Positions 8,364 through 16,400 of a DNA stretch of 64,000 bases are shown one piece after another. The notes beneath the pieces were generated by a model. That model had not been told where the DNA came from and made no database searches. It was given only the letters and a program-made list of their open reading frames with translations. The stretch's first letter is position 1; each line of letters starts with the position of its first letter. The position numbers and the translations under genes were made by a program. This DNA comes from Mytilus californianus (lineage: Eukaryota): assembly GCF_021869535.1 (NCBI RefSeq), contig NW_026262745.1, positions 20,460,001 through 20,524,000 of the forward strand, read 5' to 3'.

Positions 8364-10196
8364 GATATACACTTGTTTTGTAGATCTAAGAAAAGCGTTT
8401 GACACAATCAATAGGGATGGCCTTTTTCATAAGTTACTAAAATATAATATAAAAGGGTCTTTTTTTAATATTTTAAAAGATATGTACAAAGATGTCTCTT
8501 TCTCTGTAAAATTAAAATAGGGACTAACACAAACATTTCCCTCGTGTGTAGGATTAAAACAGGGTTGTATATTAAGCCCTACATTATTTTCATTGTATAT
8601 AAATGAACTGGTTGAAACGTTTGACCACAAATGTGATCCAGCATGCCTAGATGATACATGTAAACAAGTGTCTTGTCTTCTTTATGCAGACGATTTAGTA
8701 GTAATATCAGAATCTGCATCTGGCCTGCAAAATGCTTTAGATTAATTAAATATGTTTTGTGATAAATGGAATCTATCTGTTAATCTTAATAAAACAAAGA
8801 TTATAATATTCAATAAATCAGGAAAAATTATTAAAAAACACAATTTCTATTATAATGGAAAACTACTAGAGCTGACTGATGAATACAAGTATCTAGGTAT
8901 AATTTTTAAACCATCTAGATCTTTTAGTACAGCAATTGATCAGTTATCTAAAAAGGCTAGCAAAGCTATTTTTGTATTAGAAAATTATTATATTCTGAAA
9001 AGATGAATTTACTACCACATTTAAAGCTTTTTGATTCATGTGTTAAACCTATTTTATTATATAGCAGTGAAGTTTGGGCTACTGTTAGTTTAGTGAAACA
9101 AAATACTACCATCGAGTCAAACTATGCAAACTTTAAATTAGTCCAAATAAGATTCAAATCAAATTTGCTAAATTTTTATTGGTGGGTGTAAATAAAGATG
9201 CTGTGAATAATGCTGTACTTGCTGAATTAGGTTTATTCCCACTTTCATTGACAGCCCTTAAAAATACAATTAATTTCTGGATTCATATCATTAATATGAA
9301 TAGCGAGAGTATGGTAAAGAAAGCATACAGTGAAAACTTAAACATGTCTAATGGTTTTTGTAGTAAAATAAAAGTGTTATTAGGTAAACTTGGTTTTCAG
9401 CATGTTTGGGAAAATCAAAATACTATGTCAAGGACAAAATTACCTTTTTCAGTTCAAAAAAAATTAGAGGAGGAATTCATAAAATCCTGGAAACAAGCTT
9501 TTTTTTGTGACTCTAATAAAGATAGTCATGGTAATAAACTAAGAACGTATCGCAAAGTTAAAAATAATTACGAATTAGAAAAATATCTCATACTGGACCT
9601 TAACAAAAATGTTATTTCTAAAATGGTAAAAATTAGAATTAGTAATAGCAAATTACTAATAGATGTTGGTAGATATACTAGAACACCTTTAGAACAGAGA
9701 ATTTGTCCACTTTGCAAGGATGGAATTGAAGATGAATTCCATTTCCTCATTAAATGTAAAGCGTTAGAATTTAATAGAAATATACTCTTTTGTAATTTAA
9801 GTGATATAGTCCATCTTTTGTTAATATGTCTGAGTGACAAGATAAATTTAGTTTCATTTTGAAAAGTAATGATACTGACATTTGCACTGTATATGTAGCT
9901 GGAATAAGCGATATGTATGATTAGAACATTCATTTAAAGCAAACATAATGTTGTTAAGAACTGTTGTAGTATTAAAGCTTATGGTAATAGCTTGAAGTGA
10001 TAATATAGTATGAATAACACCTCCACGCAATGTAGATATAAAATATGTGTCTCTTATCATTGAGAAAACATATCTCTGTATATTTGGTTTTTTTTGTTTA
10101 TTTTTGTCTGTTTTTGTATTTGTATTTTGTAAATGTCAGCTGGTATCATTCCTGTATTGGAATTTACACCAATAAAATTATTTGATTTGATTTGAT
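8364..10196 (+). mobile_element. 5'-truncated non-LTR retrotransposon (LINE, RTEX/Crack-like) with a decayed RT and C-terminal CCHC region
   Basis: Frame from 8368 reads YTCFVDLRKAFD...GLKQGCILSPTLFSLYIN...LLYADDLVV (YADD at 8683-8694). In-frame stops at 8518 and 8743, frameshifts near 9000 and 9180. RICPLC..IEDEFHFLIKC is present. AATAAA at 10171 is followed by a (TTTGA)n tail. Possible low-complexity TSD TTATTTA (8357-8363 and 10197-10203). The clade call is from recalled motifs. Confidence 0.9.
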
Positions 10197-10455: not shown

Positions 10456-13400
10456 GTAAAGTGCTAGTTGCAATTTCAAAGACAAAGTGACACTGGCACT
10501 GCGACAACCGAAAGGCGAAACCGTTTGGAATAAAATTTAGACCCAGTTTCTTCGTCTAATAGGTGATAGAGCCCAACATCAGTCTCGGCACTCAACCAAA
10601 GTACCACAAATCCAGGCTTGTAAAAATGCTGTCAGGGCTGTAAAAATCGGGGCAGCCCCGATATTCTGACACCCCATTAGTCCAACATCCCATTGGTCGA
10701 CACCCCATTAGTCCGACACCCCATTGGTCCGACACAGAATAATTGAACAGTAGTAATATCTTTTTATATTAGAAAGCCTGATGACGTGTTTATTTCATAT
10801 TAGAATTGTGTTTAGAACCGAATGCCTTGTCCATCGACTGGTCCAAGTTATAAGGGTAGGTTGGTAGACATGTATTTGTTAAAATATTCGGAAATATTCA
10901 CCAATAGAATGATCGAGACTAGGACCTGGTTGTCTTCTGTGATTAAAAACGAGTACTATTAATATCTTAACTACAGTAAACATTTTGTCAAACTAGAATA
11001 TAATTTGTGAAGTTTTGTCAAAATACTTGCATGCAGATTCGTATCTATGTATCTCTCCCAAAGCAGAAAATTAATTAAGAAAGTTAAGGCTAGCTCTAAT
11101 GCCTTCCAAATAGAACTCTGTAAAGTTGACGAGTTCTCCATAAGGAATCTGTTTTGACTACATGTATATGAGTTCACAAAAACAGTATACGAGCTGGTAA
11201 ATATTAATGATGAAAAGAACAATTAAAGTAGGTAATTAAATTAATACTTGTAATTTCATCATTTTCTAGATATCTAACAAATGGGGAGATTAGATGGTTA
11301 TGGAGTTTTGTATGAAATCCGTATGTTGCTATGCACTAAACCACTTCTGATCCTATCGGACCAACATCTATGTGTTTTTCTAGTGACTGTATATGTCATT
11401 TGAACATGTCAGTATGCCATATTTCTGAAGCTAGAGCAGACAAGTTTAGAAAACAACTAATAGAAAAATTAAACAATATGAACGCACGCAATTGGAAGTA
11501 GTACCTCTTTCCGAGTGAAGCCTTTTGGAATGGTACGGAATGTCCTGTGAGGTGTTGTCCATTTTGGAAAAGACACTGACAATGCATTATTAACTTTTAC
11601 TTTCACTTTTATTTTAAAGTTGTCAAATCAATTGTGACGTTACGTCTTGTTAACCTTTGTAACCCCATATGCACCGCATTTTATGTACTTCAGTATTTGT
11701 TTTCTATGTTTAAATTGTCCTGAAGACGCCACCGTAAGTGGCGAAACATGTAGACCATAATAAAGATTTTCCTTGCAGTAATCTACGATGTTGTTGTCTT
11801 TGAGTAGCATTATTTTCCTGAGGTTTTAAGACAACCGCAGCATACCTCCGGGTATCCATCCTGATTACTCTCTACCAGCCTGTACCGTTAGAAGGTGTTG
11901 GTTCACTCGATGCAACCTATTATTTTTTGTGAACCCCTGCATCTAGACGATCCACCTTTGCCAAACCCGCGTTGTATTTGACAACCACACCGCATTGACA
12001 ATATCGACCCCTTCCGAGATTGCCGAATTATTCTAGAAAGTCAACAAATGAACTGCTACCACTCAAGATCAAAAGAAGACCACCGCAAAACGTACTGAAC
12101 CGCAGAACCGCACGATTATTGTTGAAATAAACTTGCAACATGGACAGTGTACCACAACCGCAAAATGTAACCAATTCACCACAACTTCCACCATGCCCTA
12201 CATGTGCGACTACCATACATCTTACAACATTCCCGACGCAATTGGAAGTAGTACCTCTTTCCGAGTGAAGCCTTTTGGAATGGTACGGAATGTCCTGTGA
12301 GGTGTTGTCCATTTTGGAAAAGACACTGACAATGCATTATTAACTTTTACTTTCACTTTCATTTTAAAGTTGTCAAATCAATTGTGACGTTACGTCTTGT
12401 TAACCTTTGTAACCCCATATGCACCGCATTTTATGTACTTCAGTATTTGTTTTCTATGTTTAAATTGTCCTGAAGACGCCACCGTAAGTGGCGAAACATG
12501 TAGACCGTAATAAAGATTTTCCTTGCAGTAATCTACGATGTTGTTGTCTTTGAGTAGCAATATGAAGAAAAGGCTAATTCTTTTGTAATTAGGGCACTAA
12601 GGCAAATTTAAAGAAATTTTATTTTGATATATGCACAATGAATATGCAAGAAATTTAAGACCGGAATGTCTTCTCACAAAAAATATGTTGTAATGTCAAA
12701 GTACATGTAAAAGGCTATAGATCCAGAGACACTTGTATCTGCAAAAAATTACCTATATGCATATATATATAAAAGACAATCGATTAGTTTTTAAAGAGGA
12801 AAAATAAAACACGAATGGAAATAACAATGTACAGAAAAAGAGTTTGTTTTAAGAATATATGAAATTACAAATATAATCACTGATGTGAAAAGTATATTCC
12901 CATGGCAATTTGTGTATGATGGATATTTTTTTTTTTGTGTTTTGAAAGTTTTCGATCTATAACATTGTATAAGTTTGTGTACAGTGTAGATGAACAGAAA
13001 TCATCATTCTTCGAAAAAATATTCCTTTCGCATTGTAAAACAATACTTTTTCGTTAATGACAATTTCCGAGGCTAAATTACGTGAACGATGACAGACTGC
13101 ACTACTAAGGATTGTTCTTTACATTTTCTTTTTAGTGGAGTGTATTTTCCCATAGAACACACCATGTATTATCATGATTATATTACCAAAACTTGCAAGG
13201 TTCTTGATAGATGCAATTGGTCATGGTATTTCTTAGATACCAGATGGCCCTGAGATGGGTGGTACGGCAATCTAATTAAAATATAGATCTTTGATTTCGT
13301 TATCCTCATATGAGCTTATATATACGAGCACAAGAGTTAATATAAATATGAATTTAATTAGATTGGGTAGTATGGTATCCCCTGTTTTGGTTTCTTTGAC

Positions 13401-16400
13401 ATACATATAAAAGAAAGAGTAGTTCAAATAACACGCCAACAACAATTCTATGAATAGAGTTTCTATTACAGCAGTAATGCACCTTCATTTGTTGGACTAA
13501 TGGGGTGTCGGACCAATGGGGCGTCAGACTAGTGGGGTGTCGGAATATTGGGGCGACCCCTAAAAATCATATCTATAAGCCAATACAATCTATTAAACAT
13601 GTTAAACTAAAATTTTCATAAAATTCAGCTTTGGGCCTGTATATTCAAAAGTTTATTGTGAAGACGGTAACAGAGTTCTTTCTATCATTTGAATGTATCG
13701 AAAACATAAACATAAAGCTTTTAGCAGAAAAAAGACCCAACCAGAATCATTTGTTAAAGTTCAGCATAATTTGGGGGTGTTACAGCAAGTGGAAAAGGGG
13801 TGGTAAAAAAACTTAAGAAAACTCCTTAAAACCCTGACAACTAATAGATGCATAATTGGATAACTTGAATTTATATGGTTTATATTGATAATACAGACAT
13901 GGCAGACTTTTATTATGAGATATGTCACTTTTACTCAAAAGTACAATTTAACTTCAGGCATACATCTGTTGTGTCTTGTATGCAAGTTTCTTGTATAACA
14001 ATATGACAGACATAATTATTTAGATAGAGTTCATATCTACCTTTTGAATACTTCAGAAATTATTGCAAATAATGCAACTGGCATGACTGGGTGGGTATCA
14101 CAATAATAAGAACTTGCATTCTGAAATGTGACACATACATGTATGTTTCTTTATTCTACATTGGCTAGAGGTATAGGGGAGGGTTGAGATCTCACAAAAC
14201 ATGTTTAACCCCGCCGCATTTTTGCACCTGTCCGAAGTCAGGATCCTCTGGCCATTGTTAGTCTTGTATGTTTTTTAATTTTAGTTCATTTATATGTTTT
14301 GAAGTTTAGTATGACGTCCATTATCACTAAACTAGTACACAATTTTATTTAGGGGCCAGCTGAGGACCACCTCCGGGTGCAGGATTTTCTCGCTGCATTG
14401 AAGACCCATTGGTGGCCTTCGGCTGTTGTCTACTCTTTGGTCGGGTTGTTGTCTCTTTGACATATTCCCCATTTCCATTCTCAATTTTATACATGTATTT
14501 GTATGCATCTTTCCTTGGAATGGCAATAATTATTCTCAGATTTAGGTTTGTCATGTCAAAATTGCAATAACAAATGCATGTAATAATTTCTGAATTTACA
14601 GTATTGTATCAGCCATATTGTTTTCAAGGTTTTTTGCTTGTATTATTATAAAATTTCTGAAATACAAGAAGATGATAAAAATTCGCTATTTTGCCTCTTT
14701 AATAAAAAAAAATTGATTTTTGATTTGTGCCTTTTGTCACTATCTTTACATTAAACATTAGCAAGGATAAGATGATGACAATTATAACACCTACCCATTT
14801 TAAAATGAGCATCATGATTCATGAGCATAAAACATGGCATGATACAATTATTTTGATTTTAATGGAAAATTCTATGTCAATTGTAATGTCAATCACGTGC
14901 AACCCATGTTCTAATAGAATTACAACATGGCTTTGTTTCCAAAGCGAAAGAATTAGAATACATATTAGAATAAAATATTCTTTTCAGCTTCTCAATTGGT
15001 TCATTTTAAGATGTGACATGTATACTACATGTAAGTTATTTACCAAGTAATATGTAAGTAACTATATCATGTATATCAAGGGTCGATATAGGGCTAAACG
15101 TTTATCTCTAACCATTATTTTTACATCACAGTTTACTAGGATTATCAATATCCATCACTGAACATTACTGAGAGAAAGTTAAATTTGTTTATTTATAAAA
15201 CTAACTTCTTATAATCCTTTGGAAAGTAGCTTTATTGATATTACACAACAAACAATTATTCAATACCCTTCCAAAATTTTCTCTGAACTCACATTATATA
15301 CCATGTCTATATTAACAATAGAAGATTATGGCTGAGCATAAACAAAATACCATCTAAATTAAAAATTATATTCCTATTGCTAAGAAAAACTCATCTCCAA
15401 ACTTGTGAGAGAAACTGTTATGAGATTGTTTTGATTTGAAAATATTTGAAGCAAAAAAGAAAAACCAAGTACATTCTATCCTTAGATAACCTTGTTAAAA
15501 AGGTTCTTCAGGTATATGGCAAATACATGTATCTACACATCTTAGATTCTATAATTGTATATAACATGTACAAGGTTAATACATAAAAAAAATCATTTCA
15601 TTTCACATTTATACAATGTTTTATTTTTATTTCTTCAGGTAGACCATTTTGGTTTTAATAACAATGATGAATTTGAGCAGAGATACCTGTTATATGGAGG
15701 GTTTAGGCCGCCACAGGGAGGGGGACCAGTATTCTTTTACACTGGTAACGAAGGAGATATTACTTTGTTTTGTAACAACACAGTGAGTACAAGAAAGATT
15801 TTTGTCAATATAAAAATAAGGAAATGTGGTATGATTATCGTATAGTCAGCTTTAAAAGGCCCTGACATGAAACATGTAAAACAATTCAAAAGAGAAAACT
15901 GGAGGCCTAATTTATACAATACTATTTATGAAAAACATAAATAACAGACATGAACCAACATCAACCACTGAATTTCAGTCTCCTGACTTGGGACAGGCAT
16001 GTAAACAATGTGGCAGGGTTTGATATGTTCATCTTAAAAAATAACATATAAATGTATACAGGTTTAATATTTTTTATGTCCCCGCTGTAGCGGAGGGGGC
16101 ATTAAGTTTTAACCTTGTTGGTCAGTACGTCCGATTGTCCGTACGTCCCAAAGTTGGTTTCCGCTCTCTAACTTGAGTTTGCCTCAACCAAATGTTATGA
16201 AACTTATACACAATGCTTATTACCACAAAACACAGATCAAGTTTGAATTTTGGTGGCGTCACTTTAACAGTTCTAGAGTAATGCCCCTTTATAAATGGAA
16301 AAATTGCAAAATTTTTATTTTCTTCTAAATATCAAGTAGTATTTAAAATTGGAGTTATCTTTCTTTGTCCATGATTATAGTTGAATCAACTACAATCAAT

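What the first reader, a model, noticed from the sequence alone, without database searches (positions are those of the whole stretch)
11486..12559. LTR-retrozyme-like unit: two hammerhead-bearing 324-bp repeats that would excise a 750-nt non-coding RNA
Seen in the sequence: two direct repeats (2 differences in 324 bp, offset exactly 750) each contain a complete minimal type I hammerhead. The motif is GUC/GAC stem I, CUGAAGA core, GCCAC/GUGGC stem II, GAAA, palindromic ACAUGU stem III and a GUA cleavage triplet, with AATAAA right after. The repeats flank a 426-bp unique spacer with no RT or endonuclease. Established knowledge: Penelope-like elements carry such minimal hammerheads in pseudo-LTRs; they act as dimers through the palindromic loop; one extra residue between A9 and G10.1 (here C) is tolerated in a viroid hammerhead. 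Described animal retrozymes, including mussel ones, are short tandem non-LTR monomers of about 170-400 nt. The repeat-spacer-repeat layout with a 600-1000-nt product is the one described for plant LTR retrozymes. Inference: this is a young non-autonomous Penelope-dependent retrozyme. Double self-cleavage would release 11753-12502 (750 nt), which could circularise and be retrotransposed. This may be an undescribed class in bivalves.
Basis: partly seen in the sequence, partly recalled or inferred. Interest (0 to 1): 0.9.

Follow-up and report, generated by a model that had tools for sequence, protein, structure and literature searches.

The report
Penelope-type hammerhead retrozyme insertion in mussel
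This is one young insertion of a small non-coding jumping element whose 750-base unit carries a self-cutting hammerhead RNA motif. Its two "terminal repeats" are only the overlap of 1.4 head-to-tail units, so it is a new family of an already known kind of element, not a new class.

Summary
Window 11486-11809 and 12236-12559 are direct repeats, offset 750, with 2 differences. Each carries an intact Penelope-type minimal type I hammerhead, with predicted cuts after 11752 and 12502.

The "LTR" reading does not hold. The genome has well over 150 pieces of this family, in a 750-nt and a 753-nt subfamily. They occur as 0.1 to about 14 head-to-tail units with variable 5' truncation points. Their 3' ends fall at two fixed places, unit position about 60 or about 160. 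Truncated inverted arms joined head to head are frequent.

Whole blocks are flanked by target-site duplications: 31 of 39 blocks, against 11% in a control. The window copy is 1.43 units with the duplication AATATGAA. Two paralogous empty sites lack exactly 11483-12566. This is the insertion signature of Penelope-like elements.

So it is a non-autonomous Penelope-type element, an animal non-LTR retrozyme in the broad sense. Its unit is larger than the 350-390 nt described for mussels.

Self-cleavage, RNA circles and the autonomous partner are not shown. RNA-seq support is very low. The two subfamilies switch from 99% to about 70% identity exactly at the predicted cut, which hints at RNA-level exchange there. 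Earlier notes of this scan report related retrozyme families of about 540 nt in this genome.

The parts
11475..11482 (+). Left copy of the target-site duplication, AATATGAA
   Evidence: Read from the sequence. The same 8 nt stand at 12559-12566. Paralogous empty sites hold a single copy. One search finds the shared string CAATATGAA at both edges.
11483..11485 (+). Three bases (CGC) at the 5' junction that belong neither to the target nor to the unit. They are probably untemplated filler.
   Evidence: the unit has CCG at the matching place (12233-12235); the empty sites lack 11483-12566.
11486..11752 (+). 5'-truncated first unit (unit positions 484-750), ending at the first predicted hammerhead cut
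   Evidence: BLAST map: q484-750 at 99.6% identity.
11717..11755 (+). Hammerhead 1, a minimal type I (Penelope-type) motif. Predicted cut between 11752 and 11753.
   Evidence: The identical 33-mer occurs in 77 of the units held. Sister families in the genome show helix II covariation.
11753..12502 (+). One complete 750-nt unit, from cut site to cut site. Non-coding.
   Evidence: more than 150 genomic matches, many spanning 1-750 at 96-100% identity; no ORF longer than 94 aa.
11759..11764 (+). AATAAA, starting 7 nt after the cut (second copy at 12509-12514). It is kept in both subfamilies although the surrounding bases differ.
   Evidence: GACCATAATAAAGA against GACTCAATAAAACT.
12467..12505 (+). 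Hammerhead 2, identical to hammerhead 1. Predicted cut between 12502 and 12503.
12503..12558 (+). 3'-terminal 56-57 nt (unit positions 1-56/57). This is the family's 'type A' 3' end, ...GTAGCA(TTA).
   Evidence: 3' ends of independent insertions cluster at unit positions 57-67 or 157-172.
12559..12566 (+). Right copy of the target-site duplication, AATATGAA
10649..13560 (.). Older host repeat into which the element inserted. It is a TIR element of about 1.8 kb with terminal inverted repeats built of 16-nt subrepeats (10649-10745 and 13490-13560). It is flanked by its own 8-bp duplication TAAAAATC (10641-10648 and 13561-13568).
   Evidence: many paralogous copies at 72-90% identity.

Best explanation
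Window 11483-12558 is a single, recent retrotransposition product of a non-coding, non-autonomous element with a 750-nt unit. Each unit carries one Penelope-type minimal hammerhead. The copy holds 1.43 head-to-tail units, so the 324-bp 'repeats' are a pseudo-LTR: the overlap of a truncated first unit with the next unit.

Shown here:
- the family structure
- variable 5' truncation with two fixed 3' ends
- head-to-head arms
- target-site duplications around whole blocks
- precise paralogous empty sites
- a hammerhead layout kept across covarying sister families

Inferred:
- Transcripts holding two or more hammerheads pair through the palindrome ACAUGU into double hammerheads and cut after GUA.
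- The 750-nt monomers are closed into circles by a cellular RNA ligase.
- A reverse transcriptase/GIY-YIG endonuclease of an autonomous Penelope-like element copies circles or multimers at a staggered chromosomal break. It starts at unit position about 60 or about 160 and often primes on both DNA strands. This gives multimeric, 5'-truncated and often inverted insertions.

I put about 0.85 on the identity of the element. I put about 0.5 on the cleavage-and-circle part of the cycle.
For: - Family size: one search gives more than 150 matches of the unit. Periods are 750 nt (subfamily 1) and 753 nt (subfamily 2).
- Insertion map: map 39 blocks. 5' ends fall at unit positions 1-683. 3' ends fall only at about 57-67 or about 157-172. 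In about 20 of the 23 two-arm blocks one arm ends at the first site and the other at the second.
- Target-site duplications: 31 of 39 blocks share 7 or more identical bases at both edges (median 11), against 11% with shuffled partners. One such block holds 6.4 + 0.55 units (L046), so multimers are made at insertion.
- Empty sites: two paralogues of the host repeat (C99:42811152-57 and C143:45713353-56) lack exactly window 11483-12566.
- Arrays: searches show arrays of 14 + 12 units and of 13 or more units.
- Sister families: searches show the same layout, including one unpaired base after CUGANGA. Helix II covaries among them (GCCAC/GUGGC, GCCUGC/GCAGGC, GGUGCC/GGCACC, GCCUA/UAGGC).
- Literature on the insertion scars: PMC8557442 lists pLTRs, an inverted 5'-truncated copy and a one-sided tail as Penelope insertion traits.
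- Dimer energy: the dimer through ACAUGU is favoured (-26.2 against 2 x -9.9 kcal/mol).
- Subfamily switch: the subfamily identity changes abruptly at the predicted cut.
- Available enzymes: one search shows many intact GIY-YIG ORFs (755 and 911 aa) in the genome.
- Age: units differ by 0-6 bases in 750, so the family is young.
Against: - No cleavage or circle is shown. In one search, RNA-seq gave only 37 and 17 reads on the unit in about 10-16 M records, on both strands. Reads span the uncut site and no read ends pile up at 11752/11753.
- The nine reads that run from the unit's end back to its start fit tandem DNA copies as well as circles.
- The 750-nt RNA folds no better than shuffles (z +0.85), unlike the highly self-paired retrozyme circles that have been described.
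- Helix I has only 3 conserved pairs.
- The unpaired C can pair with G12 and lengthen helix II in the predicted minimum-energy fold. That would be an inactive fold.
- No Rfam hammerhead model matches.
- No autonomous element sharing this hammerhead or tail was found. None of the GIY-YIG places lies next to a listed hammerhead.
- Insertion 3' ends lie 60 or 160 nt past the cut, so a linear cut monomer is not the template.
Confidence: 0.85

Rival explanations
1. The family is mobilised by a Penelope-type enzyme, but only from linear read-through transcripts of existing arrays. The hammerhead plays no part in mobilisation. It is either a relic of the parent element's pLTR or it serves only in transcript 3'-end processing. 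No circular RNA is involved.
For:: very low RNA signal, reads across the uncut site, and no read-end pile-up; no excess structure; insertion 3' ends lie 60 or 160 nt downstream of the cut, so the templates were uncut there. PMC4209133: Penelope hammerheads cut poorly in vitro even as dimers. PMC8557442: Naiad elements thrive without hammerheads.
Against: With 5' truncation at each round, linear templates can only shorten arrays. Yet blocks of 6.4 units bounded by target-site duplications, and arrays of 14 units, persist in a very young family. The hammerhead is identical in both subfamilies, and the subfamily breakpoint sits exactly at the cut. Sister families keep the fold through compensatory changes.
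Confidence: 0.3
2. It is an LTR-retrozyme-like element. On this reading the two 324-bp repeats are defined terminal repeats flanking a unique core, as in plant retrozymes, and form a new class in bivalves.
For: The window copy alone looks like repeat-spacer-repeat with a 750-nt product.
Against: The repeat start is not fixed. Other copies begin at unit positions 1-683 and hold from 0.1 to about 14 units. Target-site duplications are 5-12 bp, not 4 bp. Inverted arms and a one-sided tail are Penelope traits.
Confidence: 0.02
3. It is a satellite-like tandem repeat spread by unequal crossing-over or segmental duplication, with an incidental hammerhead-like string.
For: Long arrays of identical period exist.
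Against: Copies are dispersed on many contigs, each with its own target-site duplication and truncation point. Empty sites are precise. The motif is enriched 352 to 8 over the control and covaries among families.
Confidence: 0.03
4. It is a one-off internal-deletion derivative of an autonomous Penelope tandem insertion.
For: None beyond the absence of an ORF.
Against: The same 426-bp 'spacer' is present in every unit of more than 150 genomic pieces, with exact 750/753-nt periods.
Confidence: 0.01

Closest known systems
Animal non-LTR retrozymes (Cervera & de la Pena 2020, PMC7229834; Li, Clavereau & Pollet 2026, bioRxiv 10.64898/2026.07.22.740005)
   Same: Non-coding. Head-to-tail units each carry one type I hammerhead. 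GC content is low (41%). Target-site duplications are longer than 4 bp. They coexist with Penelope-like elements and are proposed to be mobilised by them. The unit length lies within the 51-972 bp range reported for vertebrate families.
   Different: The described mussel retrozymes are 350-390 nt, and the animal retrozymes of that study are described as highly self-paired RNAs; in mussel they are very abundant circular RNAs. Here the unit is 750 nt and the hammerhead is the minimal Penelope type: a bulged base, a 3-bp helix I and no helix III hairpin. The RNA folds no better than shuffles and RNA-seq signal is very low.
Pseudo-LTRs and minimal hammerheads of Penelope-like elements (Cervera & de la Pena 2014, PMC4209133; Craig et al. 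2021, PMC8557442)
   Same: The hammerhead layout is the same. So is the insertion architecture: partial tandems forming pLTRs, an adjacent inverted 5'-truncated copy, an extension on one side only, and variable target-site duplications. Non-autonomous derivatives that form pLTRs and multicopy head-to-tail insertions are described for Chlamys elements (MRC1).
   Different: There is no RT/GIY-YIG ORF, and the unit is 750 nt instead of about 3-4 kb. The one-sided extension is about 100 nt, against the reported 30-40 bp. Sequence kinship to a particular autonomous element is not shown.
Plant LTR retrozymes (Cervera, Urbina & de la Pena 2016, PMC4918200)
   Same: The predicted product is 600-1000 nt between two hammerheads. 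They are non-coding and non-autonomous.
   Different: The plant elements have type III hammerheads in true LTRs, a PBS and PPT, 4-bp target-site duplications, high GC content and Gypsy-type mobilisation. None of these applies here.

Membership tests
Penelope-type minimal type I hammerhead (min-HHR, Cervera & de la Pena 2014) | Conserved core CUGANGA ... GAAA, with a GUH cleavage triplet | tested here: met
   CUGAAGA at 11720-11726, GAAA at 11743-11746, GUA at 11750-11752. The same holds in copy 2.
Penelope-type minimal type I hammerhead (min-HHR, Cervera & de la Pena 2014) | Stable helix II with one unpaired base at its 5' end | tested here: met
   5 bp GCCAC/GUGGC with a bulged C at 11727. 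Sister families keep the bulge (A, C or U) and covary in helix II. The trait is described in PMC4209133.
Penelope-type minimal type I hammerhead (min-HHR, Cervera & de la Pena 2014) | Very short palindromic helix III that allows a double hammerhead, and a short open helix I | tested here: met
   ACAUGU at 11746-11751 is self-complementary. The dimer is favoured in cofold. Helix I is GUC/GAC, 3 bp, in both subfamilies.
Penelope-type minimal type I hammerhead (min-HHR, Cervera & de la Pena 2014) | Self-cleavage activity | not testable with these tools
   RNA reads show no read-end pile-up at the cut, but depth is only 3-5.
Rfam Hammerhead_1 (RF00163) and other Rfam hammerhead models | Match to the covariance model | tested here: not met
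   No hammerhead hit at gathering score, nor at E<=10 on 1251 nt or on 86 nt.
Animal non-LTR retrozyme | Non-coding head-to-tail repeats, each with a type I hammerhead, dispersed in the genome | tested here: met
Animal non-LTR retrozyme | Expressed as linear and circular monomer RNA | tested here: inconclusive
   37 and 17 reads. Nine reads join the unit's end to its start, which fits tandem copies or a circle. One of the two RNA libraries was oligo-dT selected; the other is recorded only as cDNA.
Non-autonomous derivative of a Penelope-like element | Penelope insertion signature: pLTR from a partial tandem, an inverted 5'-truncated arm, a one-sided tail, and variable target-site duplications | tested here: met
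   The signature is described in PMC8557442.
Non-autonomous derivative of a Penelope-like element | Sequence similarity of its 3' end or pLTR to an autonomous RT/GIY-YIG element of the same genome | not tested
One search shows only that intact GIY-YIG ORFs exist.
Plant-type LTR retrozyme | Fixed LTR boundaries, PBS/PPT, 4-bp target-site duplication, type III hammerhead | tested here: not met
   Repeat start varies between copies. The duplication here is 8 bp. The hammerhead is type I.

The most novel reading that the evidence does not exclude
The 750/753-nt family, together with a sister family of about 870 nt, would be a distinct branch of large retrozymes built on Penelope minimal hammerheads. 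The abrupt switch between its subfamilies, from 99.3% identity before the cut to about 70% after it, would be a genomic footprint of events in living cells. Either heterologous cut monomers are ligated, or the reverse transcriptase jumps templates at a ribozyme-made 5' end. That would be indirect in vivo evidence that these poorly active minimal hammerheads really cut. It would also suggest that multimeric insertions arise from joined or circular monomers.
Probability: 0.25. Interest if true: 0.6.

Novelty: new member of a known kind. Interest (0 to 1): 0.4.

Why it matters
The link between animal retrozymes and Penelope-like elements is mostly argued from co-occurrence and pLTR similarity. 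This family gives clean and very young insertion scars: target-site duplications around whole multimer blocks, two discrete 3' start sites, and regular pairing of the two end types in head-to-head arms. These scars tie a hammerhead-bearing non-coding element to the Penelope integration mechanism.

It also offers a tractable substrate of 750 nt, with near-identical copies that are probably still active. It could be used to test whether minimal hammerheads cut in vivo and whether circles or concatemers are the template.

For annotation, it warns that a repeat-spacer-repeat layout in bivalve genomes can be a truncated tandem and not an LTR element.

Tried and rejected
- Rfam scans gave no hammerhead hit. 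I judge this a limit of the models for minimal hammerheads, not evidence against the motif.
- Search for the autonomous partner, part 1. I fetched flanks of 11 hammerhead variants with loop CATAA. All are older 5'-truncated copies of the same family (78-92% identity), with no RT or endonuclease ORF.
- Search for the autonomous partner, part 2. I did not try another route.
- Search for the autonomous partner, part 3. A GIY-YIG scan listed 150 places. None lies next to a listed hammerhead.
- Comparing unit identity within and between arrays, to tell rolling-circle copying from array transcripts, gave nothing. The family is too young for the test (0-6 differences everywhere).
- Whole-unit folding shows no excess structure.
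- The monomer fold of the hammerhead region is not significant (z -1.41).
- A look-up of earlier scan notes by sequence was blank.
- The ORF at 9179-9862 has no Pfam match.
- The host-gene context (PRCP intron 1, from note s1-287999) was not checked.

Full report
**Observation**

The window holds two direct repeats, 11486-11809 and 12236-12559. They are offset by exactly 750 nt and differ at two positions. Each contains GUC-CUGAAGA-C-GCCAC-cguaa-GUGGC-GAAA-CAUGU-A|GAC. The predicted cuts lie after 11752 and 12502, and AATAAA starts 7 nt downstream of each cut. No ORF longer than 94 aa lies in or across the unit.

The loose pattern CTGANGA-N10-24-GAAACATGTA occurs 352 times in this 1.65-Gb genome, against 8 for its reversed control. 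No Rfam hammerhead model matches, even at E<=10 on 86 nt.

**What the family looks like**

The 750-nt stretch between the two cuts has more than 150 matches in the genome. I mapped 39 insertion blocks. There are two subfamilies, with periods of 750 and 753 nt.

- Blocks hold from under 0.1 to 6.4 units per arm.
- Pattern searches show arrays of 14 + 12 units (C13:30.17-30.19 Mb) and of 13 or more units (C91:5.96 Mb).
- 5' ends fall anywhere, at unit positions 1 to 683. The window copy starts at position 484.
- 3' ends fall at only two places. Type A is at about position 57-67 (...GTGTAGCATTA). Type B is at about position 157-172 (...GGTTCACTCGATGCAACC).
- More than half of the blocks have a second, 5'-truncated arm joined head to head. 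In about 20 of these 23 two-arm blocks one arm ends at type A and the other at type B; three are exceptions.

**Insertion scars**

Whole blocks are flanked by short duplications. Thirty-one of 39 blocks share 7 or more identical bases at both edges (median 11), against 11% when partners are shuffled. Examples are ATATGCAA (L037), ATACTGTA (L066), CAATTGCAATT (L031) and GCTAATTATATA (L046, around 6.4 + 0.55 units).

Partial tandems that form pseudo-LTRs, an adjacent inverted truncated copy, a one-sided tail and variable target-site duplications together make up the published insertion signature of Penelope-like elements (PMC8557442).

**The window copy**

The insertion spans 11483-12558. It consists of:

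- three filler bases (CGC)
- unit positions 484-750
- one full unit
- unit positions 1-56, a type A end

It lies between AATATGAA at 11475-11482 and at 12559-12566.

It sits inside an older TIR element (10649-13560), which has its own 8-bp duplication, TAAAAATC. Two paralogues of that host repeat run straight from window 11482 to window 12567. They are at C99:42811152-42811157 and C143:45713353-45713356. They lack exactly the insertion plus one copy of the duplication. The stretch is thus a true insertion, and the 324-bp repeats are the overlap of 1.43 tandem units, not LTRs.

**Is the hammerhead real?**

The 33-nt core is identical in both subfamilies.

Other families in the genome share the layout, including one unpaired base after CUGANGA and the ACAUGU palindrome. 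They have different, compensating helix II sequences: GCCUGC/GCAGGC, GGUGCC/GGCACC, GCCUA/UAGGC and GCCAC/GUGGU. The GCCUGC family forms its own units of about 870 nt, with inverted arms.

A monomer cannot close helix III. A dimer through the palindrome is favoured: -26.2 kcal/mol against 2 x -9.9. The active double-hammerhead topology scores -21.8.

There are caveats. Helix I has only three conserved pairs. The bulged C can pair with G12 in the minimum-energy fold. Published Penelope hammerheads cut poorly even as dimers.

**A breakpoint at the cut**

Aligning one unit of each subfamily shows 99.3% identity over positions 321-750 and about 70% over positions 4-320. The switch is abrupt and lies immediately after GUA|GAC. 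If two breakpoints fell at random in 750 nt, one would land within 3 nt of the cut about 2% of the time.

This fits RNA-level exchange at a ribozyme-made end, by ligation of unlike monomers or by template jumping. It rests on one pair of subfamilies and is an inference.

**RNA**

Two raw RNA-seq runs gave 37 and 17 reads on the unit in about 10 and 16 million records. Reads came from both directions. Some span the uncut site, and no read ends pile up at 11752/11753. Nine reads join the unit's end to its start, which fits tandem DNA as well as circles.

One of the two RNA libraries was oligo-dT selected and the other is recorded only as cDNA, so circles could be missed. Contigs of three coded species labels hold the unit. 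The 750-nt RNA folds no better than shuffles (z +0.85), unlike described retrozyme circles.

**Mechanism**

Shown: the element spreads by target-primed copying with Penelope-type scars, and multimers are formed at insertion, because target-site duplications enclose them.

Inferred: because each round truncates 5' ends, long multimers in a very young family (0-6 differences per unit) are easier to explain by rolling-circle or end-to-end copying of monomers than by transcripts of ever shorter arrays. Insertion 3' ends lie 60 or 160 nt beyond the cut. The template at that point is therefore uncut or circular, and the enzyme starts at two preferred sites.

The partner enzyme was not identified.

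**Comparison and novelty**

- Mussel retrozymes of 350-390 nt with canonical hammerheads, forming abundant circles, are known (PMC7229834).
- Retrozyme consensus lengths up to 972 bp and their kinship to Penelope pLTRs are reported for vertebrates.
- Non-autonomous Penelope-type elements that form pLTRs and head-to-tail multimers are reported for Chlamys.
- Earlier notes of this scan describe retrozyme families of about 540 nt in the same genome and reach the same class verdict. I did not test those.

This is therefore a new, larger family with a minimal hammerhead, within a known kind. The organism is called a Mytilus mussel, and the site PRCP intron 1, only in those notes. I did not verify either.

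Noticed in passing
window 10641-13568: The retrozyme sits inside a non-autonomous TIR DNA transposon. Its terminal inverted repeats are made of about four 16-nt subrepeats (GACACCCCATTAGTCC) and begin GGGGCAGCCCC. It is flanked by the 8-bp duplication TAAAAATC. Hundreds of paralogues at 72-90% identity are present in the genome.
   Followed up: partly
units of L046 against window 11753-12502: The two subfamilies are 99.3% identical over unit positions 321-750 and about 70% over positions 4-320. The switch lies exactly at the predicted hammerhead cut. The second breakpoint, near position 320, is unexplained.
   Followed up: partly
L031-L066 (for example L031, L042, L046, L050): In head-to-head insertions one arm nearly always ends at unit position about 60 and the other at about 160. 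This is a one-sided extension of about 100 nt, longer than the 30-40 bp tail described for Penelope-like elements.
   Followed up: partly
G000:C2:16204874-16207036; C13:4434142-4435942; C91:6037811-6052612; C154:74927503-74931415: A sister family has a hammerhead CUGAUGA-A-GCCUGC-cuu-GCAGGC-GAAACAUGUA. It recurs at 868-872-nt spacing with inverted arms, so it is apparently a second large minimal-hammerhead retrozyme. Its sequences were not fetched.
   Followed up: no
G000:C13:30174943-30194511 and C91:5956863-5965930: Very long arrays of the 753-nt subfamily. The first has 14 units on one strand joined head to head to 12 or more on the other. The second has 13 or more units.
   Followed up: no
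G000:C110:55838761-55854720: Five GIY-YIG matches lie in open frames of 755 aa, spaced exactly 3927 bp apart on one strand. This is a tandem of apparently intact Penelope-like elements. Further intact frames of 911 and about 850 aa occur elsewhere. These are candidate sources of the enzyme.
   Followed up: no
G000:C110:60748883 (-) and 60755133 (+): Two GCCUGC-type hammerheads lie on opposite strands, 6.25 kb apart. This spacing would fit two head-to-head arms of about 3 kb from an autonomous element. Not fetched.
   Followed up: no
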